Positions 238-23,980 of a stretch of 29,278 nt of DNA are shown here, in pieces (the first letter of the stretch is position 1; every line of letters starts with the position of its first letter). A program made the position numbers and the translations under genes. Under the pieces are notes generated by a model. That model did no database searches and was not told the origin of the DNA. It saw only the letters and a program-made list of their open reading frames with translations. This DNA is from Bugula neritina (Eukaryota; Animalia; Bryozoa). The stretch covers positions 1 to 29,278 of the forward strand of contig CAXIUT010000195.1 of the NCBI GenBank assembly GCA_964035545.1, in the 5' to 3' direction.

Positions 238-2019
238 TCATAAAAGTCCTCCAATATTTACTTTGGCAATAGTTCTATTCCGAAGTTGTTTGAAAGGTAT
301 TTATGATGTAGATTCTATTGATGGAGCTCTCAAAAATTGATTTTTTCGACTATTTTTTTATTTTAAGGAACTTATTTTTGCTATTTTATTTGAAATACCT
401 GGAACCAAAGGCTTTCTATTGACTTTGCTAGTATAAGTCATTTGACTTTTGTTCAGTTGATCTAAAATATCTTGTTTAACTCCTGTAAGGGTCTTCATCG
501 AGGAATGAGGAATCCTTGAAGCAGGATTTAATTAAAATAAATCTAAAAGTGATACTAGTATATTTTTGCCCAAATTTTAGTAACTTTTAATGGTAAAATA
601 ATTATTTTTTCTTCCACAGTAGTATGAAGATTTGATATTTTAGAGTTAATCTGGAAGTATTGAATGTCTATCGAACTTTCTATGAGCATTTTCAATTGAA
701 GGAATCTAATTTAGGCAATTACTAGCTGTATAGCCACATTCCATAGTATATGCAAATGGCATGTTAAAATGAGTATTAAAAACAACTCTTCCTGCTCCTT
801 ACTTAGTTAAATCTTAATTTCTATCTTTGGCGTTCATATGATATTTACTAAAAGAACTAGCATTGTAATCGAATTAAATACAATTGAGAGATAAAAGTTT
901 GGCAAAGAGTTGGGTTTCAGCTTGTTGTGGAAAAGTATCCATAGCATTTCCATATATAAAATTCCCTTTTTTCTGAGGATGTGAATGTAAGTCGATATAG
1001 AAACATAACCTTTCTTCACTGTGATAATATTAACCTATTTTTTTGATCCCAAATACTGAAGGTTGTTTATATACATCAGGATTATGATAGAATCTATTCA
1101 AATTTTGACCTAATAAGTCCATTCTATAGTGACCATGAGATACTCCATCGGGATTAATCATAGGAACTAGCTTAAAAAGAAAGTTTCTTCTTAGATAATG
1201 AGCTCTCGCGTCATTTGATAGTAAAAATTTAAGTAATCCATTGAAAGTATGACTTGAAGGTGCTTATCCAGGATGAACTCTTGCACTGATTAAAACAACT
1301 TTTTTAGATTTTTTGAAACTAGAAGGTCTATCTCCATGATTGAAAAGAAATTAATTGATCTTTTATTCTTTGTTATCGTATTTATCATCATTTGAACTAA
1401 CAGTTAAGAGGTGTATCGATCTTCCTTCTATGGATTTAATTAGAATTTAGTCTTTATAGTAAATCTGCTTATGACCTTTCAGATCTTTACCGATAGTTTT
1501 AAGCATTTTTTCACATTATTCGTAACTAAATGGATAGCTATAAGCAAAGTATACTGTCTGTCCTTTGGGAAAGATAAAATCGAAGTGTAGTTATGTATCG
1601 TCTTACTTAGTCTATCATCTATATTAGATAAAATACGAACACAATAGCTTGCTAAAGTCTTTGCCATTCTTCTCCTACTATCTTATAGACAGGCCTGAAG
1701 TAATCACTAAACTTAAGCTATATATGACAACTGGTACTTGTGTACTCATTGGAGACATCTTCTTGATTATGAACTTGACCTTCGTGTGGAAAGGAACTCC
1801 AGCTACTGAGAAGTAGAACCAGCCTTTCGAGTGGCTGATATACTCTGAGGTAGAGCAATCGTTGGCTGGGATAATTATGACTGATTGATTGAGACCAATA
1901 GTAGCTTGTGCCATGTTTCCTGAATCAAATTGACTTGATATAGTAATTGGTGGTGAATCTTTTCTTAGTGAAATTGTAAAAGTGTTTTTAGGTGAGAGAA
2001 TGGGTTGAATATTTTACAT
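238..2019 (-). CDS. Cytosolic carboxypeptidase (M14D, CCP5/AGBL5-like tubulin deglutamylase)
   Basis: Read with TAR=Glu it shows FDSGNM, WFYF, VYFAYSYPFSY, Zn-binding SARVHPG[TAA=E], PMINPDGV, NLNR, IDLHSH and catalytic YTMECGY. Introns at 1718-1737 (20 nt) and 1612-1636 (25 nt). Ends in TGA. Confidence 0.9.
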
Positions 2020-2162
2020 GTTATAATTTTAATAAAGTAAGAAATAATGAGAAAAATTCTCAATATCAACAAACTGTGAAAGTTAAATTAAAAATAGATG
2101 AAGCTAAATAATATTATTTTACTCTTTTGAGCGCTTTATTGAAAATTATAAATATATAATTA

Positions 2163-3016
2163 ATGAGTACTAAAGAATTGCCTGTCTTATAGCAACTAAA
2201 GGAGCAACAAGTGGTAACTAATCTTCTATCTAGAAAGAAAGCTTTGAATCGAGAGAAAAAATACGGCAAAGTAACAGACTATCTAACTCCAAAGATGAAG
2301 AAGTAAAATAGCAAAATGGCGCAGATTAACTCTAAAAGACTGAAGCGAAGGTTGTTATCGATGAGTCCAAGTTGTTCGATAAGAAACCAAGTATTTTTGG
2401 AAGTAAAAACTAAAACTAGACCAAATCAAACATTTTTGCCAACAGAAAATCAGTCAATTTATTCAATATTAATCAGTCAAATGGAAGTGATAAGACCATC
2501 AACATATTCAAAATGGCAGCTAGTTCGCAACCTGCAGTCGTCAGCCCTTAAGACGATGATTTTCTTTCCTAAAGTAGCAATAATTCTCAAGAGTTAGTTG
2601 ACAAACAAAATCTACCAGACCCTTAAACTAAAGTCATGAAGTTTGAGTATGAAGAAACAACTTAAAAATTGGGTGAATTCAGGATGGCTAAGTTCAAAAA
2701 TGGAGCTAATCCAATCAAAGAAGGTTTGATTCTAAGTCTAGAAAAAGACAAAAACAGTGAATCAACTGTGCTATACCTCATACTGAGAAACTAAGCTACC
2801 AAAATCAGAATGTATGAAGGTTTTATACCCCAGAAAACCAAAGTTGAATCATTTATGAACCGTGAAGAGAACGTGAAACTATGGGTAATGAATCCTCGAA
2901 AAGATGGATAAAAGGTGACAAACGAGGCAGAAAATGTAAAACTTCAATTTTAGAAAGTATAAGATGCCAAAAAGTTTAAATAAATGTTGAAGAGTCCTGA
3001 AAAAGTAGAGTAATGA
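2163..3016 (+). CDS. Putative Nup50/Nup2-like protein with C-terminal RanBD (PH-like) domain
   Basis: Open in table 30 after a 20-nt intron (2214-2233). It has a low-complexity N-terminal half with SIFG/NIF/LFN motifs and a C-terminal LYLILRNE..KIRMYEG..KLQFEKVEDAKKFKEML segment resembling a RanBD. Ends TAA TGA TGA. The product call is tentative. Confidence 0.55.
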
Positions 3017-3057
3017 TGAATGTATGGGTGATGATATCTAAATAAAAGTGTATTTAA

Positions 3058-3672
3058 TCAACAGCAATTATCTTAATTTTTCTTTTTCTTTCCTATATCT
3101 TTTTGTTGTAATTTAAAACCCTAAACTGTAGATTCTAATTTCTTTTTTCTTTTAAGAATCTTAGCTACTAATTGATCAAAGGCTACTCTTGTAGTCTCTA
3201 AAGCTTTAGCACTGGTCTATACATATACGATACCTATTTGTTCGGCTATTTAATTAGCTTTTAGTTTAGTAACTTCTCGATCTTCTTCTAAATCGATTTT
3301 ATTTCCAACAAGTAAGAGATCTATTTTGGCTACATCTGTTTTTTAGTTGACTTATTTGATCCAAAAATTGATCATATCGAACGACTTCAGGCTTGAAATA
3401 TCAAAAACCATAAGTATTCCATCTACATTTCTATAATAGTTGGGTGTGATAGTATTGTACCTGGTAGTTCCTGCTGTATCCCATATTTGTACTCTTATCG
3501 AGGTATCATCTTCTAATTTAACAGTTTTTTGTTTGTATTATACTCCGATAGTGGCTGCGTGGTTGGCACTAAACTATTAGTCTACATATTGTTTGAGGAG
3601 AGAACTTTTACCAACACAACTTTCACCAATTATGAGTAACTTGACACGTATCTATTAACGGGATGAGTTCAT
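3058..3672 (-). CDS. Rab-family small GTPase (atypical G3 motif)
   Basis: GESCVGKS, ATIGV[TAA=E]YK, WDTAGTTRY, NYYRNVDG, GNKID, [TAG=E]TSAK and a C-terminal CC prenylation motif before TGA. Intronless. Confidence 0.93.
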
Positions 3673-3847
3673 ACAGGCTATTATCTTGAACTTAACTAAT
3701 AGAATTATAAAGGTTTGTTCAATAATCAACTAGAATCATCTTTGGGTGGAAAAAACAAAAATACATATTTATATGGCTGATGTCTAATAAATTTTTGATT
3801 GACATTGTCCTAGTTCAAATATTTAAATTAGATTTTGATTTATATTG

Positions 3848-4683
3848 ATGTTAAGAATCATCAGAAGACTATCTTATAACTACCAAGTTATCAAACGATC
3901 AAATGGTCTTTCTGGCACTCCTCTTTCAAACATGTAGCAATTCTATCTAACAAATGACCAAGGGAAGTAACTTTCTTTCTGGAATGATGTTCCAATAAAT
4001 ATCCAGAATGACACTTTAACTTGTTGCATCGAGGTGCCCAAGTAACGTAGTAATAAGTACTAGGTCATAAAAGAGATAAAATATCATCCGTTTATGCAGG
4101 ATACTAAAAAAAATATATTTAGTAGATAGGAATAATTGAGATATTATGCGATCTTTCCAATATTTAACTATGGATTTATTCCTAGGACTTGGTAGCAAAA
4201 TCTTGTTAAAGATAAGATGGGCTATTATGTACATTTTTATTTATTTGAGGGAGATGATGATCCTATTGATGTTTGTGATTTGAGTCAAAAACAAATGCAA
4301 ATTGGTTCGATCTTTCGAGGTAAAGTGCTTGGATGTTTCTGTCTGATCGATCAAGGAGAAATTGATTGGAAGATCTTGACGATGGATGCTGAGTAGGCAT
4401 AGCGCTAGAATGTAGTTGGAGATTGAAGCAGATTAATGATATCGATGACATAGCCAGTGAACGAGTAAGGGCAGTAATGGATTGGTTCAAGAAGATCAAA
4501 GTATTTGATGGGAAGAAAGCCAATACGATAGCATATGACGAGCAGATCTTTTCAAAGAATACAACAATGAAGGTAATAAATGATACTCATTTGGAGTGGA
4601 AGAAGTTGGTATTGAGTTCTGACCCTGTATATAAATCAATCAGATAGAAATATCATATATCTGATATTGTTTTGTAGTAATGA
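3848..4683 (+). CDS. Soluble inorganic pyrophosphatase (family I), probably mitochondrial
   Basis: SFWNDVP, IEVPK, NYGFIPRTW[TAG=E], GDDDPIDV, LIDQGEIDWKI, WFKKIKVFDGK and an Arg-rich N-terminal presequence MLRIIRRLSY. Intron 4412-4431 (20 nt) and probable intron 4229-4249 (21 nt, in frame). Confidence 0.92.
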
Positions 4684-4712
4684 GATGACTATTAATGACA
4701 TTTTATTGATGA

Positions 4713-6363
4713 TCATCCCTGTGGTTCTGGTTCAACTACATCATCGATCTTGAGGATCATCTTTACCACTTGGGTGGCTAATTGAAGTTGTCCCTTCTTG
4801 GAAAGAAGTGTTTCAAAAACTTTTTGTTCTTTCATGTTGGAGTTGCCTGTTGAAAGACAATCAATCCCGAATTCTGCATTTGATTTTTATGTTTGATCTA
4901 ATTTTGCCTGGGTAACTACTTTTAATGCATTAAGTCCTGAATTTTCAGCAAGGGCCATGGGAATTTATTAAAGAGCATCGGCAAAAGCTCTAACTGCATA
5001 TTGTTCAGTGGTTTTAATTTCTTTTGCGTGATTATTGACAGCCACACTTGCAGCGATTTCTGAAGCTCCTCCTCCCCAAACGATTCTGTTGCATCTGATA
5101 AGAGTAGAGACAACACAGAGAGCATCATGGATTGATCTCTTAGCTTCTTCTACGATCATTTTTGATCCACCTCTGACGAGAATGGTGACTGCTTTACAGT
5201 TGGCACAGTCTTCAATAACAAGCATCTTTTCATCGCCTGTACCGAAATGGATTTCTTTTATTCTTCCAGCTTTTCCAAGTTTTTGAGCTGTGATTTATTA
5301 AAATCTGGGAATAATTCTAGCTCCAGTAGCCATGGCAATAAGTTCAATATCAACTCCTCCAACCCATCTAACTGCTGGCAATTTATGTTGCAACAAAAGA
5401 TGGTTAGCTTCATCTTAGAAACCCCATTGACAAAGAGCAATATTACATCCATTCTTTTGAAGATAATCTATCATATCTGTGAAATATTTTTGTTCAAGTT
5501 TGTATAATTTTTGGAAACTTTCAGCACTGGTAATATCAATGTTATGTTTGGTTTTTGGTTTAGGAGCTTAGAAAGGACAAGTTAAGATAGCTATTCTTGC
5601 ATCAAGTACTTCTTTAGGCATTTGTGGATGAGAAAAATCTTTATCAATGAGGATACCTTCAATCAATTGGGTGTCTTCAATGCTAGCACCTGTTTTTTAT
5701 TGAATTTTAATTAATTCAAGATTAACATCTTTTCTTTCCAAATCAGCTACATCAAGGACAGCTTTGACAGCAATTTATGCTAATCTTTTTTTATCTTTGC
5801 TGACAACTTTAGATCCCAAGGAAACGCAAGCAGCATCTACAAGTCCAGCATACTCTTCTTTTGAAAATTTGATTTATTCACTAAATTCTTACAATCTTTT
5901 GACAGCAACTTCAACAGCGATATCAAATCCATCAGATATTTTCAAAGGATGCAATCCTAAATAACTAATATAATACCTTTATCTAATAATTTTTATGCTT
6001 GTTCAAGTAGTGCTCCAGCAAGTACGACAATTCCTGTTGTTCCATCACCAACTTAGTTATCATGACTTTTTGATAGTTCAACCATCAATTTAGCAACTGG
6101 ATGTTGAATCTCCATCTTTTAGACAATAGTAGCACCATCGTTGGTCACTGTTACTTCTTGATCACCAGACATAAGCAATTTATCAAGTCCTTTAGGTCCA
6201 AGTGATGATCGTAAAGTGGAGGCAACTGCTTTAGCGGCAAGGATATTTCTCTGGATAGAAGAGATTTTACTTTAATGGCATCAATTCCTTTGACTCTCAT
6301 CTTGGAGTCCTGTTCTTTGATGACAATGAAGGGTCGTCCGTACTAGTCGAATGCTAAACTCAT
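4713..6363 (-). CDS. CCT5: T-complex protein 1 subunit epsilon (chaperonin CCT/TRiC)
   Basis: MSLAFD[TAG][22 protein letters not shown][TAA][22 protein letters not shown][TAA][25 protein letters not shown] and KMILKIDDV. Two 20-nt introns at 6251-6270 and 5957-5976. Confidence 0.97.
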
Positions 6364-6404
6364 AATTTTAAAAAGATTTAAATATTATTTTAAGTTGTCT
6401 ATTA

Positions 6405-7480
6405 TCATTTCCGTAAATATTCATGTTTAAGATGATTTTTGTCGTAAGTAGATGTGTATGGTTGGTAAGGTCTCCCTATCTTTTCTTGAGTTAATATTGA
6501 AATCTATCCTCCAGCAGCTGGAATACGGGTCTGATAGTTCTTTTCATAGAGCTTTGTTATGATAAAAATACTGATTCTTTATGGAATTAGCGGGCTGATT
6601 GGTTGGGATCAGGTTCATAGAATGAATTTACTTGAGTTTGTGGGGTAACTTTTTGTCCATAAGAGAGATCATAGCATGTAGATAGTTGTCTTTTTTGGAA
6701 CTAGATAAATGAAAAGATACATCTTCAAGAGCAATTCCATGACCGAATAGAACATCTCTTTGTTCTCCTTTATGATGAGGATAGACAAATTTATGATATT
6801 ATACTTCTTAAAACTTCTGGATTTCAGGTTTAACGATGGAATTCGATGCATAAGGATTGATTCCTTTGGTAGTGACATGCTTGTCAATTTTAGCTTTTTA
6901 TTTTTGATCAACATAAACTTATGATCCAATACTCGGTCTGTTTTTCAAAATTTATCCTGTTAAAATATCTGGAATATCTTCTCCAAGGTTCTGCACTGAG
7001 GGATCGTTTCCTTGAGGCCTATGGAATTTATTTGCTAATTGTTGTCTTGTGACTTCATATGATTTACCTTCACTTTATAGTCTTTATTATAGTTTTGGAT
7101 TGTTGTTGACTAAAGGCACCTTTCTTGCTACTTATTTTTAATGGAATATGCCATATGAAGTTGATTTTTATGGTCTTTTGTACTAAATAATTTTATTGAT
7201 ACAGGCTCTCCAGTCACTCCGAACCCACTCTTGTAAAATTGAGAGCGGTCTGGATTTTGGCTGGCCATGAACTCATTGGCTCTATGAAGTGAGTGAGATA
7301 AGTTGTGATTGATTTGGTTAGTTGTGACTTTGGGAGCGTCGGGGAGTGGACCCTAGATAGAAAGAATGATACTTTTTAATGAAGGTCTCTTCCTATTTTA
7401 TCTTCGACAAAGTTTCCAACTAAGACACCGTGGCGGTATTTGTTGACTGGATCCATGACAGAGTAAGCAGACATTGACAT
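6405..7480 (-). CDS. Putative ciliary microtubule inner protein, CFAP107/C1orf158-like
   Basis: N-terminal KYRHGVLVGNFVEDK resembles the YSxxVLIGNWxE motif of CFAP107/CFAP95-type proteins, followed later by VLFGHG..STCYDLSY. Four 20-nt introns (7353-7372, 7183-7202, 6701-6720, 6552-6571) give one continuous ORF. The family call is tentative. Confidence 0.6.
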
Positions 7481-7820
7481 TTGGAAGTTATATATTAGTT
7501 ATATTATGGTGTTTTATCATCAAAACATGATATTATTCACAAAAAAAGTCTTTTGATGATGATTTGAGTGCTATTTTGGAATAATTATCCCTTTAAGTAA
7601 GGAATATTTTAAGTTACTGAAGTATTCATATTCAAATAGAAGATATTTGAAAATGAATAGAGGGTTTTTAGATAGAATTAATCATTTAAGATCTTTTATT
7701 GAGAAATAATATGACTTAGAAGATGATTATGTTCAAATCTTGGTGATTAACAGATTATAATAGTTGTTTAGCCTCTATAACACAAGATGACCTCTCCCAT
7801 TAATAATAATTAATTTACAT

Positions 7821-8502
7821 ATGTCCTAAGGCGCCCTTCAACCTCTCAACAACCAACCATCCACCCACCAGAGAAAAAAGTCATGGACCAAGCAGGAAGA
7901 CTAGGGCTATCATACATCCATATGCACTCATGCAACTGAACACACCAACAAAAACTAAGAAGAAAAAGAAGAAGGACTTATCTCCTCCAGCTCAGATGAG
8001 TCGAGTAAACAAGAAGAAGAGAAACCTCGAGATAGATGGAGTGGAGGCTTAAAAGAAAGAAAAAAAGTTGAAGAAAGTCGGTAGTGGGGCAAGTTAGGGA
8101 GAAACAAACGTTCTTATTCTCGTCATAATGACTCTAATTCTCGGTAGGATAATTACTACTCAGATCTAGAAGTCGTTAAAATTTGAAAAGAGCTCAGCGC
8201 CAACCTTCTTACTATCCTGATCGCAGTGAAAGTCAAAGCAAAGAGTACCGTCACGACCGTTAGACTATTTAAGTTAAAATTTTGGTGCCTAGAAGACTAG
8301 GCCAGGACACTCAAGAATTGAAATATTTGTAGACTTTATGCAAATCAAGGATAATTATTGGAGAACAGGTACTCATAATGTGATATAGACAACTGGTGGG
8401 GAGATAGTTTTGATAATTAGAGGGCAGTTGAAAGATAACATTGAGTGTTTAGAGTTGCTGCAGAAACGATTGGCTAGAATGAAGATCTTTGTGTCTAGGT
8501 GA
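7821..8502 (+). CDS. Charged/RS-rich protein with a degenerate C-terminal KH-like domain
   Basis: Continuous ORF after 20-nt introns at 8144-8163 and 8369-8388. The C-terminus EVKILVPRRLG..LETLCKSRIIIG..IVLIIRGQLKDNIECLELL fits the KH beta-alpha-alpha-beta-beta-alpha pattern. Confidence 0.55.
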
Positions 8503-8600
8503 TTGGATAACTGTATGCATTTATTTGGTGATATCATTTATTGTTTAAAGAAGATATCACTCAATGGTTTTTATTGATTTATAATAATTGATTAATCGAG

Positions 8601-8999: not shown

Positions 9000-9074
9000 T
9001 TGAATCATAATCTAATCATCTATTTCATTTGTTTAACATCTAATAATAGTTTAGAATGATAAAATTAAATCAAA

Positions 9075-9145
9075 GGGGTTGGGGTTGGGGTTGGGGTTGG
9101 GGTTGGGGTTGGGGTTGGGGTTGGGGTTGGGGTTGGGGTTGGGTT
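9075..9145 (+). repeat. Internal telomeric tract (GGGGTT)11+GGGTT
   Basis: 71 bp of G4T2 repeat in right-end orientation, 75 bp after the preceding stop codon. Confidence 0.97.
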
Positions 9146-9161
9146 AATAAAGTAGTACGGA

Positions 9162-9824
9162 ATGGAGGCTGTTGTTAAATTGGTTGATACTATTCGACCA
9201 TTTTTACCTCATTTTCTTACAGATTAATAACTAATACCATTGACAATCATGCTTATTGGTATGATAATGCCTATTGGCATTGGTTCTGCGGTTGTTGTTG
9301 TTGATATTTTATCAAGTGTTAGCATTTTTGGAGTTAAAACTGGAGTGGCTGCAGTTAAGGGGACAGCTGGTATAGTAAGAACTAGTGTAGAAGTAGCAGC
9401 TGATTTGTTAATAGTAAAACCTGTATATTTACTATCATACCCTTTTCGAAGATGGAGTTAGAAGAAAGACGTGATGGAGAAGTTATAAGCATGTCGATTG
9501 ACTGAATTTTAGTTGATGAAGTATCAAAAGATGTATAGAGAAGTAAAATAGGTGGATAAAATATTTATAATGATTCGGGAAGTAGGTACAATTAATGAAA
9601 ATAAGCAAGATATTAGGGCATTAATTGGATCTCTCGACTGGAATGATAATGTAAGTCGTTTACTACCTTTGATAAAGAAGAATAGTAAGAATTATACAAA
9701 AGAAAGTATTCAGTTAATTTGTAATAAGAATATAGTTCGTTGGGATGCAAAATTAAAGTAGTTGCCAAGAAATGAGATTGGAATTGTAGAGGTGTACTAT
9801 ATTGTTTTGGAAACCTTTGGATGA
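9162..9824 (+). CDS. Hypothetical membrane-associated protein, possibly 5'-truncated
   Basis: Joins the supplied ORFs 9240-9461 and 9552-9761 in one frame through TAR codons and ends at TGA 9822-9824. It has a hydrophobic Gly/Val-rich stretch. The frame stays open upstream into the telomeric tract. Confidence 0.6.
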
Positions 9825-10177
9825 TTACTTTAATGTACTTTTAAAAGATTTTTATCTCTTGTATAAATATTTATAAAGAACAAGTTTTTATAAAACTTTT
9901 TAAAGTTAATTCAAGCCACCAGAAATGAAAACAATTCTTAAGTTAGTCTATTTGTCAATTTGTTATTTATATTATATTTTAATCTTACATTTCCTCACTA
10001 TAATCTCTTTTATAAATGCTGATAATAATATAAATCATTTTTAACTATTTTTCCTCATAATATAAAGCTTCTTTATTCTATCTCTAATTTATTGGAAATA
10101 ATTGAAAAAAATGATGATTTTAAAAATATAGGCGGGTATAACTATTAATTTGACTAGTTTGAATCCTTATAATATAA

Positions 10178-10948: not shown

Positions 10949-11099
10949 TAGTGGATGACATTTGTTAATTACTTTTAAATATTTTTTAATCTAAATTTAA
11001 GTCAGTATTACAATGCAGATATTACTATTTTATTGATTAAATATTGAGTACTTTACTATTGATATATTTAGAATTCATATTATTTTAAACCAAAATCAA

Positions 11100-12520
11100 A
11101 TGGAACTGCTTAAAGATCCAGGAAATACGCGAGTCTACAAAGGTCTACCTCCTCCCCCACAAAAACCTATTAAATCCTAAATTCTTTTTCAAGGAGGTCA
11201 TATCCAAGTATCAGTCCTCAAGGATTTCCTTAAAAAATAAGGTAAAGTAGCACCTGAAGATTACAAACGCATTGTACGTTAAGCCACGCAAATATTCAGT
11301 ATGTCTTGTACTAGCCAGGATCAGAACCTAACTTAATTGTCATTGATGACCCAGTCACCATTGTTGGAGATATTCATGGACAGTTTTATGACTTTCTTAA
11401 GTTACTTGAACCTTAAATCGGAGGAAATTGCTAGAATACGAAATATGTTTTTTTGGGAGATTATGTGGATCGAGGTAATTTCTCAATAGAAGTTTTACTT
11501 CTCATTATGTCCATGAAAATAAGCCGACCGAAACAAGTAATAATGCTTCGAGGAAACCACGAATGCCGACAGCTTACATCGTACTTCAACTTCAGACAAT
11601 AATGTACTATCAAATCTATTCAGGTCTGAGTAAATACAATCAATAGATATACGATCTCACGATGGAAATGTTCGATCAGATTCCTTTATCATGTATTCTT
11701 AATAAAAAATTCATTTGCGTACATGGAGGCATCTCCCATGACTTAAAGACAGTATTTTTTGGACGATTTAGTTGGAAGATGTTAAAAAAATAGACAGGTT
11801 TCGAGAGATACCGAAAATGGGTCTTTTTTGTGATTTGATGTGGGCTGATCCAGTTGATAGCAAAACTGGTATTTGCGAGGGCCTTGTGAAGCAAAATGAT
11901 GTACGTGGATGTTCATACTACTTTGGGAGCGAACTTACTAAACAATTTTTCGATAAGAATAAAATAATATCAGTAATTCGAGCACATGAAGCTCAAGCTG
12001 AAGGGTTTAAAATGTACAAATGGTCAGGAGCTTAAAAATTTCCTGCAGTTATAACAATTTTTTCAGCACCTAACTACTGTGATTTCTATAATAACAAAGG
12101 CGCTGTCATCAAGTTTGAGGTATTTTAGTATTAAATCAGAATAACACCTTGAATATTCAACAATTTGTTGAGAGTCCTCATCCTTATTTGTTACCAAATT
12201 TTATGAATTTATTTTCTTGGTCGATTCCTTTTGTGATAGAAAAGGCAACATAGGTATTTTACCACTTGATAAAACCATAATCGAAAATAGAGTCAACAGA
12301 ATTACCAATGTAGTTTGTTTTACATAAGAATGTATTGTAGAAGTTGATGGATCATACTAAGAAGCAGATAGAGACGAATATGTAGTTGGTGAGTTTGAAT
12401 GGTAATTGTCCTGACGAGAAGTTGTTGTAGACTGGTCGCTATCAGCAAGGTAAGAAGTAGTCTTTTGAGTAGAGGAAGCATATTGATTCTCGTAATGAGA
12501 GTCGACCTAGTCCAAATTGA
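11100..12520 (+). CDS. Calcineurin A (PP2B catalytic subunit)-like phosphatase
   Basis: [44 protein letters not shown], the CnB-binding segment [23 protein letters not shown] and an autoinhibitory-like tail [16 protein letters not shown]. Four 20-nt introns (11299-11318, 11604-11623, 11752-11771, 12120-12139). Confidence 0.95.
11299..11318 (+). other. Representative 20-nt spliceosomal intron (GTATGTCTTGTACTAGCCAG)
   Basis: Removal restores the conserved calcineurin frame (IFRSEPNL). It has A at +15, and the internal AG at 15-16 is skipped. Confidence 0.9.
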
Positions 12521-12560: not shown

Positions 12561-14398
12561 ATGATTAATCAGGAGGTAGCTGCTTTGAGACCACAGGAGT
12601 ACACATCAAACAATTCGATAAGAAAATCTTAGAAAGTTATTAATTATCCTGCTAACTTTCATCTTAAGACTTAAACTCAGGATAGAGGTGAAGACTAGCA
12701 TCGTTCTCCTTAACATAACAAAATGGAATTCAGAGAAACATCATGGAGAAAACCTCGAATGCCTTATAACAAATTTCCTGACGCTTTTCAAATGAGAAAT
12801 AAAGGGTATTTATCATATTAGAAAGGAAAAGTATCGATCGAGGGGCGGCAGACGATTATTAGAAGTTAGTTAAGGAGAGATAGTTTAAACAGGTCAAGTA
12901 GTACCTCAATCCCATCAGTTTGGTAGATTTTGAAATAGGTAGTAAAAAAGACAATAAAAACCAAAAGAATAAAGTGCTAACCCTTTGGCGGCCTACAAGC
13001 GATATTTATAGATGCAAAAAAAATATACTAAGTAATTTCAAGATTAAGATCCTTTCCGTCGTAGCAAACAACTCTCTTTCAAAAAAAGTACATCTGGAAT
13101 CAGAATCAATGACTGTATCACTCTAGATGTTATCAAAAGAGGTCATAATACTGGTACTATCAAAAAAATGTTACATGTTCCTACTTTATAACTAGTTTGT
13201 ATCAGAGAAGAGCCAACTAATACTCGATAGTCAAGGAATTCTATTAAGGATTGGGTGGGTTTTTGGCAAAATAAGTTGAATAGATAGACGAGACTACCTT
13301 TTATGCAGGTGCATTCTGTTGCTTATAACTACCCTTAGGGTGCTATTTCGATAGTTATTGATTATTTCCAGGAAGGTTCTTTGCTTGATTTGCTTGAAGT
13401 GGTGCTTACTTTGCCTGAACTAGTTATCAGATAGGTATTTTAGCAGGTTTTGATCAGTTTGAAGACGTATTATTAGTTGACTGACATGCAATTCGGAGGG
13501 TTATCTCCATCACAGATACTAATAACTAATTAAGGAGAAATCAAATTAGGAATGGGATTGTATTATCATTTTACTAATAGTACATCTAACTCGATTTATC
13601 ATATTCGTACTCCTCAGAAAACCAGTATTTTATTTCTGATTTAGTATATTTTAGATGAACATGACTCAAAAAAACTTCATGAAGAGTTCAATAGTTCAGC
13701 CACTAAACTTATAAATCGAAAGATCTTTAGATATATTCAAACTGGGTTTAATAATGTTATAATGCGCGATAGGTGGTTTTGAAAACTACTAGCAATCTGA
13801 TTCTTTACACTAGATTCTCAAGATAGTATTCAGTGAATAGGGTCAAAAGATAGTATAACGTGACAATGTATGCTGTATGATCCATTCATAGTTGTACTTG
13901 ATTGAGTGGGGTAATCGCTAGTAACGACTTAAGCGATAACAAATCGATCCGGATAAAATAATACTTTATATGAAGTATATCAAAGATAGATTTTCTGTTG
14001 GCTTTATTAATTTCTTATGTTCTTGCTTGAAGTTGTCGCATGGAAGGAGAGTTTCTTTAAATTAGTTGATGGTGCATTCTTTTTTACGATCTGAAGGTAA
14101 AGATAGTAGAACTGTTGGACTTCAGTTGAAAGATCTGCTATTGGTGAGAAGGAGCGAACCGGATCCGATTATTTAATCTGTATATTTTTGATTTATCTAG
14201 AGTCGAATGGAGAGAGTAGATAAATTTATTGGACATGTGATGTCGATATTGAACGAGAGACCTCGATAGGAGTTGTTGGGTTTGATGCGAGGGAAAGACA
14301 AGATAATGGACCTGGGTAGGTATATAGGTGTAAATTATTATGGTTTGGGTGAGAAGTTGTTTGCTGCGATGGGGGAGATGGCGAGGACAAAGGTATGA
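12561..14398 (+). CDS. MAP2K/STE7-like pseudokinase
   Basis: Kinase-fold landmarks (LHVPTLELVCIRE, ISIVIDYFQEGSLLDLL, LSPSQILITNEGEIKLG, DIFKLGLIMLECAIG, FINFLCSCL..LMVHSFL) with the VAIK, HRD and DFG motifs degenerate. Introns at 12806-12825, 12923-12942, 13625-13644 and 14180-14200. The frame near 13580-13660 is unresolved. Confidence 0.7.
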
Positions 14399-14457
14399 AT
14401 AATATTATATTTTTATTGTTTTTATTTTTACTTATACTAAATATATAAAATAAATAA

Positions 14458-15411: not shown

Positions 15412-15461
15412 TTGTTTATTTTTTATGATTAAATTATATCTATGTTGATAATAGATAGTAG

Positions 15462-17732: not shown

Positions 17733-17865
17733 TATATTTTGTTATTCAGTGTTTTTTAAATGTTATGAATTAAAAATGATAAAAATAGAAGTCGAGAAGA
17801 ATGGTACTGGTTTGAGTTCAGTAGATATATATTTTATTGTGCTTTAAATTCATGATGAATGTTGA

Positions 17866-18437
17866 TCAGAGTCCCATTTCGGTTTTTCTATGGGCAAGTT
17901 TTCTTTTAATGTGGGAATTGAATTTTTCCCAGCTGATTGTTTCACAGTTATATCCTCCTACTGCATGGATGATTTCCAAAAGTTGAAGTTCAGTGTAGCC
18001 GTACTTCAATTGCTCATTGATAAACTTCAAGTCTTTGAACTCTAATTCTCCCTTTCCTTCGTAGTCAATCAAGTTGAAAGTTGCATGTCTACCTTCTTCA
18101 GTGAAAGGATTGCCCTGAATAAGTCATTATTTACAATTCTATTGGTGAGTTCCTTGACAAATCCTTCGAAATCAAGAGCGTGACCGTCGTTTAACTCATG
18201 GATTTCATTGAGAAGTCTAAGAGCCATTCCGAATTTTTAATCAAGGCCAAGAGTAGTGGCAGTGAGGATAATATCTCTGATATCAGTTCTTCTTTGACGA
18301 GGATCAGCGTAGAGGTTGAAGACTTGGTAGAGTTCTTCAATGTGTCCTGGCGCGAAGATGGGATTTTTGGCTCCAATGTCTTTAGCCATGATAGCTTTAA
18401 GATCTCTGTCGTGAGTTTACTTTCTTTCCTTGGTCAT
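17866..18437 (-). CDS. Divergent centrin-like EF-hand protein
   Basis: EELYQVFNLY..LGL..ALDFEGFV..FNLIDYEGKGELEFKDLKFI..ISWEKFNSHI follows the four-EF-hand centrin layout. One 20-nt intron at 18115-18134. Confidence 0.8.
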
Positions 18438-18551
18438 AAAATATCTTACAATAATAGAAATATCAATAAAATAAATCTTATTCAACTCTTCATTTACAGT
18501 TATTTTTATTAAATAAAATAATTAACAAAAACATCATAATTCTGATTGTTT

Positions 18552-21115
18552 TCAAGGCTGTCCATAAAAAATATGAGTGATAGGTCCATCTTGTTAATAA
18601 CCTAGCGTATCTTTCCATAATGATGATACTAAATCACTTGATTTTTTTTGTCTTTATCTTAGTCTTTCCATAGTATCTAATTTTTTATTAACAACTAGAG
18701 TTGGTTGATATCTGATGACAGGTCTATCTCTATTGGAAGGTGTTGGATGTATTCTTCTTAATTTTTATAAATGAGCTTATTTTTTGCCTTCAGAAAGGAT
18801 ACAAAGCAAAGGAAATTAATCATCTTTCTTTGATTTGATCTATTAAACTTGAAAATTTAGTTGTTTTGAACGATAGGTTGATCTAAATTATGAATCCATA
18901 TAAGAATTTAATGTTTTTTTGTTATTTTATAATTACAAAGATTAATTTTTTGTCTTTTTTATTATATATTTTGTATTTCTTTATGTTTCTTTTGACTTCT
19001 TATCTTATCTGCTTGCATTTTTTTATGATCTTTTAAGAATTCTTTATAAAAAGTTGTTAGTTGTAGTACTATCAGCTCTTGGTCTAGTCATAAGTAAAGG
19101 AGGTTTTTATACTTTATTTTGTATTGGTTATTAAGAAATTGTGTTTCTTGTTACTCTTGCTAATTTATCTATTTTTTTTAATTATCTTTTATTTCCTTTA
19201 TTTTTCTTTATCTTTACTACTTGTAACTTTTTCTTTTATTAATCTTCATTCAAACCAAAAGCCTATTCAACTGCTGTACATTTTGGTATTATATTTCCTA
19301 TTTTTTAAGTTATAGCTATTTAGTCTATTTCAGGTTAAGAGTCTGATCCTGATTCTTAATGAAAAGAATATTTTTATTTATTTTTGCTTTTTAAAATTGC
19401 TACTTAAGCTAATACTTTTGGTAATTATTATTAAACTTGAATTGCTTCTTGACTTTTAGAATAGTATTGATTCAAAGCTTTAAGTAAAGCATTTGAAAAA
19501 GAAATAAAAACAGATGGAGTCAGTACTTTAATTGGATTATTAGCTGCAAAAAATGATGATTCTATCGTCAATACATCAGGAGCTCTAGTTATTTACGAGA
19601 TAACAGCTCTAGCTGTAGTTTCTTTATATTTCGATATTCCAAAGGTACACAATGGAAAAGAAAATATACTTGAAGCTCTTGACATCAATAAAGGTAATAT
19701 TTTTCCATGATTATCAGTTTTACAACAATATGCAAAAATATTATACTCTTTGCTATGAGAATGAAGATCGAAACAGCTGACAACTTATTCTTAATTACTT
19801 AACCTTCTTATTTACTATTTGATGGCTATAAGATGAGGATGTAAGAGTTTATTAGGTTCTTTCCAAGCTCGATTCATATCCATTCCACTGAGATCACATC
19901 TGAAGTTTCCATAAATAACACCATCAACGTTGATCATAGGAAATATTCTGAAAGTATAATTTTTTAGTAGCCAATCTTTTTATACAAAAGAATCTCTTAT
20001 TAATTCTTTTATTAATGCTTCCATGAGAAAGGAAGACCATACTTCTCCTGGATGTTGCCTTGCTAGAAATATGATATTCTTTTTTGATGGTTCTGGAGCG
20101 CTGATGGTCAGATATGGTACTTGTGTGTTGGAGAGAGAATATGAAATGGTTTGTAGGTTGAATTTCAAATCAGGTCTTTCTAGAAGGGATTGTTTTGATT
20201 CTAGTAGGAAATTGGTCATTTTTGAGTATGAGTAAGGAGAGAGAAGGGAGAAATAGTTGGTATCATTCTAATAATCAAAGGTGGCTTCGAAGGTGAGTGT
20301 ATAATTTTAGTTATAGTGTCGATATTAATTTTAATTTCCTATTTTAGAATGATACATGTTGACTTTATTGCATTTGGACCATCCATTTCCTTTGGCTTCT
20401 TGTTACTTTACTGAAAATCTCGTAGGTTTCATTCCTTGTTTGACGAATCCTAGATATTTTCTAAAATTAACAATTGAAAAAGTATAGGTGCTATATCTTT
20501 TTTTATTTTTAACTGCGAAGTAAAACCATTTATTATATCCATTGGTATTGGTGTCATTAGAGAGAAAGAGGACATAGTGGTTATGTGCAGCTATGTTTTT
20601 ATAGGCATATAGTAGATTTCCACATTAAAATCTGGATTCGAAGGTGAGATCTTAACTTTGGTTTTTTAGTTACCAATTTTTAAGAAGTGAATAATTTTAT
20701 GCTGAGTAATTGACAACGCTGGTTAGGTTGATATTATTTTAGGTGTTGATGGACTAGAGATCTATTTTTTTATTGTTTCTTTGGTAAATGAGTTGATAAT
20801 TTTTGTTAGGAAAGTTGGGTTAATCTATTTTGGATATGATTTCTTTATCTTTTTTAGTACTTTTTATGCTGTTTTGATTCTCTTCTAGTGTAAAATGCGG
20901 ATATGAGTTGATTACTTCTGGTAGTTATTTTCTTTATATGATGATGTATACCTTATCAATGAATGAGTATTGATGTATCTTGGTTGATAGTCGTTGGGTC
21001 TGATAGTAGAATTAATGACTAATTTAGGTGTATCTTTATGTTATATTTTTATTATATTTTGAACAAATCCCTAGTCGTTATCTGAATCTCCCTATTAATT
21101 TTTATTGAACTACAT
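18552..21115 (-). CDS. Cytosolic carboxypeptidase (M14D, CCP1-4/Nna1-like) with a long charged C-terminal tail
   Basis: FESRF[TAA]CGNL, DTNTNGYNKWFYF, PYSYS, LARQHPGEVWSS, PMINVDGVIYGNFRC, DMNRAW, FDLHSHS, TARAV and LTIESSF. A 20-nt intron at 20932-20951 links the ATG at 21115 to the long frame. Confidence 0.9.
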
Positions 21116-21518
21116 TATTATTGCTTTTATAAAATATTTTCAAAAACCTTTCTTCATATTTTAGTACTTTTTCTATATCTATCACTTCAGATAGATAACT
21201 ATGATAGAAAAAGGAGGATTTTTGAGTTTTATTGTACTTAATATATAAAATTTTATATAAGTATATCTTATGGGTAATCAAATGCTCTGTAAATAAAGTT
21301 AGTGCTGTCAGTAATATATCGGATAAAAGGGAATATAGGTATAATTTCAAAATAAATCACCATCTCGATCTCAATAACCAAATTATTTACCAGAATAATA
21401 AGCAATCAGATAAAGCGATGGTTCTACTAGACCAAAATAATCCATCCAAACTGTAAAATAAATAATAAAATAGTAAAACTATATCTAAAACTAACTAAAA
21501 TTACAAAACTAATCATCT

Positions 21519-22172
21519 ATGCATTAAATACGTCTATCAATTGATTCAAAATGGGTCCATAAAATGAAAAACAATGCTATGTAGCCAATCGATATATTCA
21601 AAGTATACAATTTTATCAAAAAAGCATCATCTAAATAGACCAAACAAATCTATCAAAGACTTAGCTACTAGAATAGAAAGATGCAATTGTTGTTCAATCA
21701 GGTTATACCATCAATAGGTAGCTATTTTTTTGAAATTTAATTGATATCGTATCTGCCTAAACATAAATGTTAGTTTACTGTTGGGATTGTCAACTACTTT
21801 GCTGCGGTGGAGCTGTTGCATTGTAGAGATAGAACTAACCAGCAGCAAAGTTATACTTATAGGTAAAGAAATTTTAATATGGAATTGGAATGTCCCAATA
21901 ATCCTTTAATGCTCAATAAAATCATTAAAGTTTAAGTGTCAAGAGATGGAAATCATCCATACATAGCCTTTTATATCGATGAAGAAGAAATATAAAAAGA
22001 ATAACTGACTAAATAGATGCAGGAAGTAGGGGTATCAATGGTTCCTTATATTCAGACACAGCATGAGGGGATGTGTTTCGGTTGGAAGACGCCCTCTGGT
22101 TCAAATAGTCAAGGAATTAGATTATCGACTATTCCAGAAGAAAGTCAAAGTGGAATATCTGCAACAAGATGA
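21519..22172 (+). CDS. Hypothetical protein with a SPRY/B30.2-like beta-rich pattern
   Basis: ATG to TGA ORF in table 30 with GSYFFEIELI..FTVGIV..IIKVEV..IAFYIDE..MVPYI. The fold call is tentative. Confidence 0.55.
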
Positions 22173-22199
22173 TTTTTCTCAGATAGATTTGTAAAGATA

Positions 22200-23980
22200 T
22201 CATTAGTCAGTAATTGGATCTGTGATGAAGGGATGGTTGAGTGCTTCTTTTGCTGAAAATCTAACGCTTGGATCTATTTTGAGACATTTGCTGAGGAAGT
22301 CAAGGAAGTTTTTGTTGTTTGATTGAATTCTGCTTTTGAGGTTGGTCAATTTAGGTAGATATACTCGTTGATGTCCTGTTTTTCTTTTCTTTTTATTGGG
22401 TTATTCACCTATTTCTTAGTATATTTCTTATAAAAGTATTAATTATTTAGTAAAATATTTTTGCACCTCTTTACCGCTTTGAATCATCCATGAAGGCCAT
22501 GGTCCTCTCAATCCTTGTATCTTAGCCAAAATCCCAATCGCATTATCACTTTAAAAAAGCACTTGTCTTGAATATAATTAGGCAATAATGCATCCTAAGC
22601 TCCAAATATCAATTTTTTAAGTATAATCACATCCGAGTATGATCTCAGGTGCTCTGTAGCTTCTAGTTTGTACGTAGAATTGAAGATCATCATGGAAGAA
22701 AACGGAAGATCCGATATCTATGACTTTGATTTGGACATTTGAATATGATTTTATAAGAATATTTTATGGTTTAAGATCGTTATGGATAATATGCAGTCTA
22801 TGCATCGTGGATAGGGCTGTTAGTATTTGTTTTGTAATGCTTTGTAGGTTTTTTAGTGTAAAGTATTATGGTTTTTTTTGATAAACATCGTATAGATTTT
22901 ATTTTAGCAGTTCTGTGACGATCATGAGATGTTCTCTGTGATAGAAGAAATCATGCATGTTGATGATACTTGATTAATCTAGATTGCAGTTGGCTTTTAT
23001 GTATTTTAGCAATTTGATTTAATCTAGGGCTTGATCCATGTAATCTTTATTGTTGTGTATCATTTTGATACAAAATCTTTGTTTTTGGTTGTTGGAGGTG
23101 AGATCTTTGACTTAGATGGCTTTTGAAAATTGCGCTTGACCTAAATTTGATAAAATTTGAAATCTACCAGCCAAAACCTCATTGATAACTATCGGCATTT
23201 ATCTCTATTACTAGAATCCTGTCTTATGTCGATCATAGATCACTTTCAGAGGATATGAGGCCAGTGCTATTCCATTGTCTTAGAGTGGATATCCATCATT
23301 ATTATTATTTTTAGAATCGAAGAGAAGATTGGGTGGCAATTTTGTTTTTATTTTATCGTTGTGGTTATAGGCGATGATATTTTTCATTTGTTACCATATG
23401 TTGTAGAAACTTTAAGGATATGGTACGTTTTTAATAGCGCTGAATAGATGTAAATTAACTTGGTTTCGTAGTGTTTGAGGGATTGTATTTATTTGATGAC
23501 TTTATTGAGTTAATTGGCTTGGAATTATATCATGTCATAGCCGTTATCGTATTACCCTTACCATTAATTTTAATGCAATCTTGATTAATCTAGAAATTGT
23601 GGTGCAGAATTGAAAGTATCAAGTATATTTTATTTATATTGTTAATACAATTTATTTTATTTATTTACTAATTTTTTAAAGAAAGGTAATTATACTAATT
23701 TTTAATACTAGCTTGTAGAATGATGATTATTTGATTTTTTTATTCTCTATACAAACTTTTTTAAATATCTATTGTCTGTTTTCTGAAGATGTTCTCTTAA
23801 TTTATTTTGATTTTATTCATCATTTGGTATTATTGTCTTATTTATTGTTGTTAGAGATTTATGAAAATTACGAATTGGGGCATTAGATGTTCTTCTACTC
23901 TATGACTGGAAGGTTTTCATCGTTTTTAGTAAGTTATTTTTCTATAGAAAGGATTCGATTGAACGAGGGATATCATTCAT
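22200..23980 (-). CDS. DYRK-family kinase of the DYRKP type
   Basis: LisH-like N-terminus, KTGF[TAG TAA TAG]R..VLAGRF, LGQAQFSKA, CIKMI, DQALD[TAA]IKLL, HNDLKP[TAA]NIL, DIGSS, YVQTRSYRAPE and DIWSLGC. One 20-nt intron at 23440-23459. Confidence 0.92.

What the first reader, a model, noticed from the sequence alone, without database searches (positions are those of the whole stretch)
1718..23459. Ruler-defined 20-nt introns with an invariant adenosine at +15 (-6)
Seen: 20 introns needed to restore reading frames are exactly 20 nt (1718-37, 2214-33, 4412-31, 5957-76, 6251-70, 6552-71, 6701-20, 7183-202, 7353-72, 8144-63, 8369-88, 11299-318, 11604-23, 11752-71, 12120-39, 12806-25, 12923-42, 18115-34, 20932-51, 23440-59). 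All 20 have A at position 15, giving GT(A)N11-A-NNN-AG. The introns were picked by frame restoration before this A was noticed. There is no GTAAGT extension, no branch-site consensus and no polypyrimidine tract, and AAG acceptors occur. Established: heterotrichs (Stentor, Blepharisma) have ~15-nt introns with an A at -6, and Paramecium introns are ~25 nt with a length spread. Inference: this lineage independently evolved a spliceosome that places the branch A at a fixed distance (15-nt lariat loop) and ligates 5 nt downstream. I cannot confirm from here whether this has been described for peritrichs.
Basis: partly seen in the sequence, partly recalled or inferred. Interest (0 to 1): 0.9.

Follow-up and report, generated by a model that had tools for sequence, protein, structure and literature searches.

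The report
Fixed 20-base introns in a ciliate
The genes on this small ciliate chromosome are interrupted by tiny introns that are almost always exactly 20 bases long, with one invariant A six bases from the end; this is a longer version of the 15-base introns known from Stentor, and it holds across many related species.

Summary
All 20 listed segments are 20-nt GT..AG with A at +15 (19 start GTA).

Independent checks:
- In 200 kb of other small contigs of the assembly, GTA..AG strings are over-represented only at length 20, and the whole excess carries A at -6.
- A gene finder blind to intron length and content finds a spike at 20 nt.
- Splicing four of the introns gives a calcineurin A that aligns without gaps to 25 homologues.
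- In about 20 related metagenomic ciliates, 58 of 62 unique introns in this gene are exactly 20 nt. All 58 have A15, while the interiors are fully diverged.

TAA and TAG align with conserved Glu, which is the peritrich code. The window is a complete telomere-capped 29-kb chromosome.

Limits:
- No RNA run was available, so neither splicing nor the branch point is shown directly.
- The length is not absolute. The window needs one 25- or 31-nt intron, and relatives show rare 19-, 22- and 23-nt introns.
The A sits in y-N-A-y, the interior is U-rich, and the acceptor is never GAG.

The layout matches the heterotrich 15-nt introns, with A also at -6. A 2026 paper already reports narrow intron lengths in three peritrichs. 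Other readers of this scan noted the same pattern on other contigs.

The parts
1718..1737 (-). 20-nt intron candidate in the cytosolic carboxypeptidase gene (GTACCAGTTGTCATATATAG)
   Evidence: GTA/A15/AG pattern. The upstream exon matches Pfam PF18027 positions 1-57 of 107, so the domain must continue past it. The downstream frame needs a second, non-20 intron. Partial support.
1612..1636 (-).
   Evidence: Only a 3n+1 GT..AG here joins the frame '...WQRLeQAIVF' to '...LHFDFIFPKGQTVYFAYSYPFSY' and skips the in-frame TGA at 1615-1617. This is inference from frames, with no homology check.
2214..2233 (+). 20-nt intron candidate
   Evidence: Pattern. Removal extends the ORF from 304 to 367 codons. 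No independent support.
4412..4431 (+). 20-nt intron in the inorganic pyrophosphatase gene
   Evidence: Pfam PF00719: the upstream piece ends at profile position 93, seven codons before the junction, and the downstream piece starts at 101, so the two abut exactly. Unspliced, every frame hits a TGA.
5957..5976 (-). 20-nt intron in the CCT/TCP-1-like gene
   Evidence: Blind HMM. ORF grows from 429 to 555 codons. Unspliced, the frame hits a TGA.
6251..6270 (-). 20-nt intron in the same gene
   Evidence: Blind HMM. ORF grows from 515 to 555 codons.
6552..6571 (-). 20-nt intron candidate in the upstream minus-strand gene
   Evidence: Pattern only. The local coding score is +4.1, which is weak.
6701..6720 (-). 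20-nt intron
   Evidence: Blind HMM.
7183..7202 (-). 20-nt intron
   Evidence: Blind HMM.
7353..7372 (-). 20-nt intron
   Evidence: Blind HMM.
8144..8163 (+). 20-nt intron
   Evidence: Unspliced, all frames hit a TGA within 75 nt.
8369..8388 (+). 20-nt intron candidate
   Evidence: Pattern only. A T>A polymorphism at 8379 (intron position 11) is seen in two other DNA runs, with no length change.
11299..11318 (+). Intron 1 of the calcineurin A (PP2B) gene, phase 1
   Evidence: The spliced protein aligns without gaps to 25 homologues. Orthologous 20-nt introns with A15 occur in many relatives.
11604..11623 (+). Intron 2 of calcineurin A, phase 1
   Evidence: Same evidence as intron 1. This intron is absent in relative L033.
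11752..11771 (+). Intron 3 of calcineurin A, phase 0
   Evidence: Also blind HMM.
12120..12139 (+). Intron 4 of calcineurin A, phase 0
   Evidence: Also blind HMM. The orthologue in L031 is 19 nt with the A kept at -6.
12806..12825 (+). 20-nt intron candidate
   Evidence: ORF grows from 326 to 380 codons. The HMM placed a 32-nt alternative with the same frame shift nearby.
12923..12942 (+). 20-nt intron
   Evidence: Blind HMM. ORF grows from 282 to 326 codons.
13625..13644 (+).
   Evidence: Blind HMM at intron penalty 4. It has GTA, A15 and TAG.
18115..18134 (-). 20-nt intron
   Evidence: Blind HMM. Unspliced, the frame hits a TGA.
20932..20951 (-). 20-nt intron candidate
   Evidence: The blind HMM picks it. 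However, the 934-codon ORF is open without it, so it is not needed to restore the frame.
23440..23459 (-). 20-nt intron, the only one starting GTT
   Evidence: Blind HMM. ORF grows from 444 to 609 codons.
24053..27214 (-). Intron-less SF3B1 gene, encoding the U2 snRNP protein that holds the branch adenosine
   Evidence: A 1054-codon TGA-free ORF. The C-terminal 72 aa match human SF3B1 residues 1233-1300 at E = 3e-16.

Best explanation
These are ordinary U2-type (GT-AG) spliceosomal introns, shrunk to a nearly fixed 20 nt, in a ciliate that reads UAA/UAG as glutamate (the peritrich code).

Every part of the 20 nt is a canonical signal at minimal spacing:
- GUA at the 5' splice site.
- A U-rich, G-poor interior.
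- A degenerate branch site y-N-A-y with the A at position 15.
- Three free bases.
- A YAG (rarely AAG, never GAG) acceptor.

The A at +15/-6 is most likely the branch point. That would give a 15-nt lariat loop and a 5-nt tail. This is the heterotrich (Stentor/Blepharisma) layout with five more bases between the 5' splice site and the branch.

The length is held by selection, not by descent. Orthologous introns in many related species keep 20 nt and A15 while every other interior base has changed. Because 20 = 3n+2, any retained intron shifts the frame.

Shown: the pattern, its excess over chance, restoration of frame and homology, and conservation across the clade.
Inferred: actual splicing in this species, the A as branch point, and the reason for the fixed length.
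For: 1. Pattern: 20/20 A15 and 19/20 GTA.
2. Independent 200-kb sample: an excess only at k=20, all of it with A(-6). The tighter motif gives 75 vs about 18.
3. A gene finder blind to length and content gives a spike at 20 nt, with 35/37 and 48/52 carrying A15.
4. Calcineurin A: splicing the four introns gives a 446-aa protein that is gapless against 25 homologues at all four junctions. It is colinear over 421 aa, with no gap, with intron-less transcript-like contigs of a 75%-identical relative.
5. Pyrophosphatase: Pfam profile coordinates abut exactly across 4412-4431.
6. Relatives with GC 24-52%: 58 of 62 unique introns (two 40-nt artefacts excluded) are 20 nt. Of these, 58/58 have A15 and 57/58 start GTA. 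No other interior column is conserved (manual checks).
7. The introns are present in DNA contigs of four other runs, with no indel in 11 introns. They are therefore not removed at the DNA level.
8. Machinery: SF3B1 lies in the window, and a ciliate-type U1 with ACUUACCU lies on a small contig.
9. The same -6 geometry is published for Stentor and Blepharisma (PMC9505925, PMC13685798).
Against: - No RNA evidence exists for this species. The only runs holding the sequence are DNA. No cDNA/genomic pair at 95% identity or more was found among relatives.
- The branch point is not mapped. The A could instead be part of an extended 3' splice-site signal.
- The length is not absolute. The window has a 25/31-nt intron. 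Relatives have one 19-nt, two 22-nt and two near-identical 23-nt introns. In those the A is at -6 in two cases, at +15 in one, and at neither in the 23-nt pair, so the anchoring end is unresolved.
- Four or five of the 20 listed introns have no support beyond the pattern.
- The ciliate's own U2 and U6 were not found.
Confidence: 0.78

Rival explanations
1. They are real 20-nt spliceosomal introns, but A15 is not the branch point. It would be a recognition base of an extended 3' splice-site signal (A-N3-AG) read by a protein factor or by the catalytic core, with branching at another interior A or a non-A residue.
For: No branch mapping is available. Three bases between a branch A and the AG is shorter than the spacing known to work in yeast or human (general knowledge). 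Many introns have other A residues at positions 10-14. In the 22- and 23-nt exceptions the A is not consistently at -6.
Against: A15 is the only invariant interior base in 58/58 diverged introns, and it sits in y-N-A-y, like the yUnAy branch consensus. The same -6 A is read as the branch point in Stentor and Blepharisma (PMC9505925, PMC13685798). Some introns have no other interior A upstream of 15, for example GTACTCTTCTACTCATGCAG-type sequences with few A residues.
Confidence: 0.14
2. The fixed length reflects no ruler in the machinery. It would be a mutation-selection equilibrium: deletion bias shrinks introns to the shortest length that still splices, and selection against 3n and against longer, costlier introns trims the upper side.
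For: The same argument is made for 15-nt heterotrich introns (PMC13685798, section 'Why choose 15 bp?'). Also, 20 = 3n+2 gives a frameshift on retention. Rare 19-, 22- and 23-nt introns exist, so other lengths can apparently be tolerated.
Against: The upper side is as sharp as the lower: no excess at 21-26 nt in 200 kb, and 58/62 introns at exactly 20 nt across species with GC from 24 to 52%. Paramecium, under similar pressures, keeps a spread of 20-35 nt (PMC12862383). This differs from the main reading in emphasis rather than in kind.
Confidence: 0.3
3. The segments are not spliceosomal introns. They would be DNA-level eliminated sequences left in the assembly, translational bypass or frameshift sites, or assembly artefacts.
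For: No RNA data show their removal.
Against: They carry GT..AG ends, not TA..TA. They are present, at the same length, in DNA contigs of four other runs and in metagenome assemblies from many projects. Transcript-like contigs of a relative lack any insert at the four orthologous sites. Their density (about 0.5 per kb) and strand always follow the coding strand.
Confidence: 0.02

Closest known systems
Heterotrich tiny introns (Stentor coeruleus, Blepharisma, Fabrea): 15-16 nt, GTAAWWTTTATWTAG
   Same: One dominant length. GTA start and YAG end. AU-rich interior. A single near-invariant A exactly 6 nt from the 3' end, which shifts with length in Stentor (position 10 of 15 nt, position 11 of 16 nt). 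Canonical snRNA recognition motifs (PMC9505925, PMC13685798).
   Different: Here the length is 20 nt, not 15, so the loop from the 5' splice site to the A is 5 nt longer. The length class is 3n+2 rather than 3n. Phases are roughly even (19/13/13) rather than biased to phase 0. Intron density is about 0.5 per kb rather than mostly intron-less genes. The host has a different class and genetic code (UAR = Glu).
Paramecium short introns (median 24-25 nt)
   Same: An oligohymenophorean ciliate. GTA...YAG ends. Very short and AT-rich. Non-3n lengths are favoured (PMC12862383; Jaillon 2008 as cited there).
   Different: Paramecium shows a spread (15-100 nt, with the middle half at 23-26 nt), and PMC10946202 reports no conserved 3'-proximal A for it. 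Here 90% or more of introns are a single length with an invariant A.
Chlorarachniophyte nucleomorph introns (18-24 nt, mode 19)
   Same: A comparable size and a strongly peaked length distribution (19 nt makes up 49-78% of introns; PMC4035089).
   Different: That system is a reduced endosymbiont nucleus with the standard code, a broader distribution and no reported invariant interior A. Here the host is a ciliate somatic chromosome with C4A2 telomeres.
Fused branch-site/3' splice-site motifs of Trichomonas and Giardia (Irimia and Roy 2008, cited in PMC10946202)
   Same: The branch A lies at a fixed, very short distance from the acceptor AG.
   Different: Those introns have a long conserved motif, variable total length and very low numbers. 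Here only the A itself is conserved and the total length is fixed.
Published peritrich genomes (Vorticella campanula, Epistylis hentscheli, Campanella sinica) in PMC13685798
   Same: The same genetic-code group. The paper states that the three peritrichs have 'similarly narrow' intron length distributions and few 3n introns.
   Different: The readable text gives no modal length, no A15 and no cross-species conservation. I could not see its figures or supplements, so I cannot say how much of this is already shown there.

Membership tests
U2-type GT-AG spliceosomal introns | GT at the 5' end and AG at the 3' end on the coding strand | tested here: met
   20/20 in the window. 58/58 unique 20-nt introns of relatives.
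U2-type GT-AG spliceosomal introns | Removal restores one reading frame that is colinear with homologous proteins | tested here: met
   Four calcineurin A junctions are gapless against 25 homologues. The pyrophosphatase junction is exact in Pfam profile coordinates. The other introns are supported only by ORF or HMM arguments.
U2-type GT-AG spliceosomal introns | Present in genomic DNA but absent from mature mRNA | tested here: inconclusive
   DNA presence is shown in four other runs. No RNA run holds this species. Transcript-like contigs of a 75%-identical relative lack inserts at all four orthologous sites, but the matching genomic DNA of that relative was not found.
U2-type GT-AG spliceosomal introns | Branch-point adenosine forming a lariat | not testable with these tools
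   Only the invariant A15 in a y-N-A-y context is seen.
U2-type GT-AG spliceosomal introns | Host encodes the major spliceosome | tested here: met
   SF3B1 lies in the window. A U1 (73 bits) with a 5' ACUUACCU lies on small contig C244. U2 and U6 of the ciliate were not found: the hits lie on Mb-size contigs that seem to be another organism.
Heterotrich-type length-locked tiny introns | A single dominant intron length | tested here: met
   An excess only at k=20 in 200 kb. 58/62 introns at 20 nt across relatives.
Heterotrich-type length-locked tiny introns | Near-invariant A at -6 | tested here: met
   20/20 in the window, 58/58 in relatives, 44/45 HMM-predicted GTA introns.
Heterotrich-type length-locked tiny introns | Length 15-16 nt (3n dominant, phase-0 bias) | tested here: not met
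   The length is 20 nt (3n+2) and the phases are 19/13/13. No excess at 15-16 nt.
Peritrich nuclear genetic code (UAA/UAG = Glu, UGA stop) | In-frame UAA and UAG at conserved Glu positions; UGA is the only stop | tested here: met
   In calcineurin A, UAA aligns with E in 25/25 and 20/25 homologues, and UAG with E in 12/25, 12/25 and 11/25. In-frame UAR codons of relatives align with the window's E (211) or UAR (186). TGA-only ORF statistics agree.
Paramecium-type short introns | Length spread of about 20-35 nt around 24-25 | tested here: not met
   No excess at 21-35 nt.

The most novel reading that the evidence does not exclude
The spliceosome of this ciliate clade defines an intron by three anchor points at fixed spacing (GUA at 1-3, A at 15, AG at 19-20). 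It would then act as a true molecular ruler that tolerates almost no other length. Such a mechanism would need no exon context at all. That could explain the tandem arrays of 20-nt introns separated by 1- to 2-nt exons that other first-stage readers report on other contigs of this genome (not checked here). It would also make this clade, beside the 15-nt heterotrichs, a second calibration point for the minimal geometry of the catalytic spliceosome.
Probability: 0.3. Interest if true: 0.8.

Novelty: new member of a known kind. Interest (0 to 1): 0.5.

Why it matters
1. Annotation. Any gene caller run on these contigs needs genetic code 30 and a 20-nt intron model. Standard settings shred every gene, as the fragmentary public protein predictions for relatives show.
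2. Mechanism. There is now a second ciliate class of length-locked introns with the same A-N3-AG 3' module as the 15-nt heterotrich introns, but a 5-nt longer 5' arm. The pair is a natural experiment on how close the 5' splice site, branch helix and acceptor can sit in a working spliceosome.
3. Evolution. The rule holds in about 20 species spanning GC 24-52%, while the intron sequences are scrambled. This is clean evidence of selection on length alone.
4. Practical use. GTA-N11-A-N3-AG at about 0.5 per kb, on the coding strand, flags contigs of this ciliate group in metagenomes and in mixed assemblies such as this one.

Tried and rejected
- RNA evidence. The look-up of sequencing runs gave six holders of unknown kind. 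The four I laid (X1, X3, X4, X5) are all DNA contigs about 1% diverged, with no spliced joints.
- Genome-wide sampling.
- Single-strand gene finder. The first version, and runs allowing introns up to 150 nt, were too weak. Long 'introns' simply skipped short exons between two real 20-nt introns.
- Local coding-score test (+/-75 nt). It is underpowered: it gives -1.7 for the homology-proven intron 11604. I therefore did not use it to reject any intron.
- snRNAs. The high-scoring U2, U6 and U1 genes lie on Mb-size contigs C1-C9. Those contigs lack the 20-nt signal, carry no copy of the window and have more standard-code ORFs. I do not attribute them to the ciliate.
- U2 branch-binding motif. A pattern search found no copy on small contigs.
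- Rfam scan. A scan of 149 kb of ciliate contigs found nothing. The SSU rRNA search failed twice.
- Pfam on the 21-aa exon after intron 1718. No hit.
- cDNA/genomic pair. None at 95% identity or more among 41 related loci.
- Literature. Searches for the accession numbers of related contigs, and for '20 nt introns' in ciliates, found nothing relevant.
- The two '40-nt introns'. These are artefacts of two neighbouring 20-nt introns whose short middle exon gave no alignment, so I excluded them.

Full report
**The observation.** All 20 coordinates hold a 20-nt segment. Ten read GT..AG on the + strand and ten on the - strand. In the sense orientation, 19 start GTA (one GTT), all 20 have A at position 15 (= -6), 15 have T at 14, 13 have T at 16, 17 have C or T at -3, and three are AAG acceptors. 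The window is 32% GC and is open only under a TGA-only stop code. With A at or below 0.35 on either strand, 20 of 20 by chance is about 8e-10, provided the set was picked blind to that A.

- Window-wide, the string GTA-N11-A-N3-AG occurs 35 times. The same construct at other lengths occurs about 18 times.
- I fetched 20 x 10 kb from other contigs of the same assembly. Three were not ciliate-like and were dropped.
- In the remaining 201,581 bases, GTA..AG counts follow a 3-periodic background at every length from 12 to 35 except 20 (405 vs about 305). The entire excess has A at -6 (215 vs about 110).
- A tighter motif (GTA..TA-NN-YAG) gives 75 at length 20, against a range of 10-25 (typically 15-21) at every other length from 13 to 40. 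Introns starting GT[C/G/T] show no peak.
- From these counts, each other single length can hold at most roughly a tenth of the introns.

**A blind gene finder.** I wrote a two-strand HMM with 3-periodic Markov coding states, a TGA stop, and introns defined only by GT..AG with a flat length prior and no content model. I self-trained it on long ORFs.
- With lengths of 10-45 allowed, 37 of 92 predicted introns (intron penalty 6) or 52 of 138 (penalty 4) are exactly 20 nt. No other length exceeds 8.
- Many of the 3n+2 'others' (29, 32, 38, 41 nt) sit on top of a canonical 20-mer and are misplacements.
- Of the 20-nt predictions, 35/37 and 48/52 have A15. Among those starting GTA, 44 of 45 do.
- For 45 such introns the phases are 19/13/13. 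The interior (positions 4-14) is 53% T, 27% A, 14% C and 5% G. Interior GC is 20%, against 32% in predicted CDS.

**Homology.**
- The gene at about 11100-12480 (+) is calcineurin A. Removing 11299-11318, 11604-11623, 11752-11771 and 12120-12139 gives a 446-aa protein. It scores E = 1e-130 against full-length homologues and aligns without a gap at all four junctions to 25 of them.
- In that alignment, UAA and UAG fall on conserved Glu columns (25/25, 20/25, 12/25, 12/25, 11/25). The organism therefore uses the peritrich code.
- For 4412-4431, the two flanking exon pieces match the pyrophosphatase Pfam profile at positions 46-93 (plus seven codons) and 101-153, which is an exact abutment.
- Together with the HMM and with in-frame TGAs in the unspliced reading, 16 of the 20 have support beyond the pattern.
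- 2214, 6552 and 8369 do not. 12806 has only an extension of the open frame from 326 to 380 codons. 1718 is partly supported: the carboxypeptidase N-domain continues past it. 20932 is not needed for ORF continuity.

**Exceptions inside the window.**
- After intron 1718, the carboxypeptidase frame still has to shift by +1 and skip a TGA at 1615-1617. Only a 25-nt (1612-1636) or 31-nt (1606-1636) GT..AG does that. So not every intron is 20 nt.

**Relatives.**
- Public protein fragments similar to the calcineurin exon read straight into 'V...' after KFE/KFK. That is, they read into a GT(A) at the position of intron 4.
- I fetched their contigs and 36 more loci from metagenomes. I located introns by spliced alignment to the window protein, with no length preference.
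- After removing two 40-nt artefacts, 62 unique introns remain, from roughly 20 distinct relatives with GC of 24-52%.
- Of these, 58 are exactly 20 nt. All 58 have A15 and 57 start GTA. Position 13 is Y in 51, position 16 is Y in 48, and -3 is never G. No other interior column is conserved.
- Orthologous introns share no sequence beyond these anchors. For intron 1, compare GTATGTCTTGTACTAGCCAG here with GTAACTCGCAGTGGACGCAG and GTACCCCCACATCCACTCAG elsewhere.
- The in-frame UAR codons of the relatives align with Glu or UAR of the window (397 of about 600), so they share the code.
- Exceptions:
  - One 19-nt intron has A at -6.
  - One 22-nt intron has A at -6 and another has A at +15.
  - Two near-identical 23-nt introns have the A at neither position.
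  - These are too few to say from which end the spacing is measured.
- Three transcript-like contigs from three sequencing runs, ending in sequencing adapter, carry the orthologue of a 75%-identical relative in one uninterrupted frame. They are gapless over 421 aa with my spliced model.

**What could not be shown.**
- No RNA run holds this species. The four runs I laid are DNA contigs about 1% diverged. They contain all 11 introns of the 6-kb stretch with no indel, and one substitution at an unconstrained position (8379).
- This argues against DNA-level excision but does not show splicing. The branch point is not mapped.

**Where the window comes from.**
- It is the whole of contig C204 and carries CCCCAA repeats at one end and GGGGTT at the other. 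It is therefore a complete 29-kb somatic chromosome.
- The assembly (216 Mb, 321 contigs) also has Mb-size contigs. These carry no copy of the window, lack the 20-nt signal in a 56-kb sample, and have about three times more long standard-code ORFs.
- Those contigs hold the high-scoring U1, U2 and U6 genes. I take them for a second organism and do not use their snRNAs.
- A lower-scoring U1 on small contig C244 has the canonical 5' ACUUACCU and an Sm site.
- The window itself encodes an intron-less SF3B1. Nothing seen suggests an altered core machinery.

**Comparison with what is known.**
- Stentor introns are 15 nt with the putative branch A at position 10, and 16 nt with it at position 11. That gives a 10-11-nt loop and a 5-nt tail (PMC9505925).
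- Blepharisma has GTAAWWTTTATWTAG with the A at position 10 (PMC13685798).
- A conserved 3'-proximal A is also reported in Euplotes and Oxytricha, but not in the other species that paper examined (PMC10946202).
- Paramecium has a median of 24-25 nt with a spread (PMC12862383). Nucleomorph introns peak at 19 nt (PMC4035089).
- The present introns share the A-N3-AG module and the GTA start with the heterotrich type. They differ in having 11 rather than 6 bases between GTA and the A, in being 3n+2, and in occurring at about 0.5 per kb.
- PMC13685798 says three peritrichs have narrow intron-length distributions, but its readable text gives neither the mode nor the A.

I therefore file this as a new member of the known kind 'length-locked tiny ciliate introns'. 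The claim of an independently evolved spliceosome is untested.

Two other first-stage notes on other contigs of this genome describe the same pattern. Others describe tandem arrays of such introns with 1- to 2-nt exons, which I did not examine.

Noticed in passing
window 1-120 and 29160-29278: The window starts with (CCCCAA)n and ends with (GGGGTT)n, and it is the whole of contig C204. It is therefore a complete, telomere-capped 29-kb multi-gene somatic chromosome.
   Followed up: partly
G000 contigs C1-C9 (loci L001-L004, L025-L030, L034, L036-L048); L024 = C5:1-10000: The assembly seems to hold a second organism. It has Mb-size contigs (C5 is 17.7 Mb and begins with 10 kb of CCCCAAA repeats). 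These contigs carry very high-scoring U1, U2 and U6 genes, no copy of the window, no 20-nt intron signal, and about three times more long standard-code ORFs than the small contigs. Whether they are a host or co-isolate, or something else, is open.
   Followed up: partly
L014 (C200:1-10000) and L021 (C300:1-10000): Two small contigs have 45-48% GC and long standard-code ORFs, which looks bacterial. The assembly is therefore mixed.
   Followed up: no
window 24053-27214 (-): An intron-less SF3B1 gene (1054 codons, many in-frame UAR) lies on the same chromosome. It encodes the U2 snRNP protein that cradles the branch adenosine. It would be the first protein to compare with Stentor and Paramecium.
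   Followed up: partly
window 1606-1636 (-): A 25- or 31-nt GT..AG is needed to keep the carboxypeptidase gene in frame. The 25-nt form has A at +15 but T at -6. The 31-nt form has A at -6.
   Followed up: partly
window 9060-9150: A (GT)n-type microsatellite reads as GVGVGV... inside an open frame. The read-laying tool skipped 9067-9150 as a repeat, and contigs of other runs break there.
   Followed up: no
window 9800-10160: All indels between this assembly and the four other DNA runs (1, 3 and 6 bases) cluster at 7664 and 9833-10156, outside the introns. None of the 11 introns in the 6-kb stretch differs in length.
   Followed up: partly
L035 1501-1655 (-) = G000:C244:2223-2377: A ciliate-type U1 snRNA candidate (73 bits) with a 5' UUACUUACCUGG and an AAUUUCUGA Sm-like site lies on a 31% GC small contig. 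It is quite unlike the 155-bit U1 copies on the large contigs.
   Followed up: partly
L033 (NCBI GCA_006844875.1, contig SPJK01062808.1): A public genome assembly holds a 50% GC calcineurin orthologue with the same 20-nt/A15 introns at sites 3 and 4 and no intron at site 2. That assembly is either of a related ciliate or contains one.
   Followed up: no
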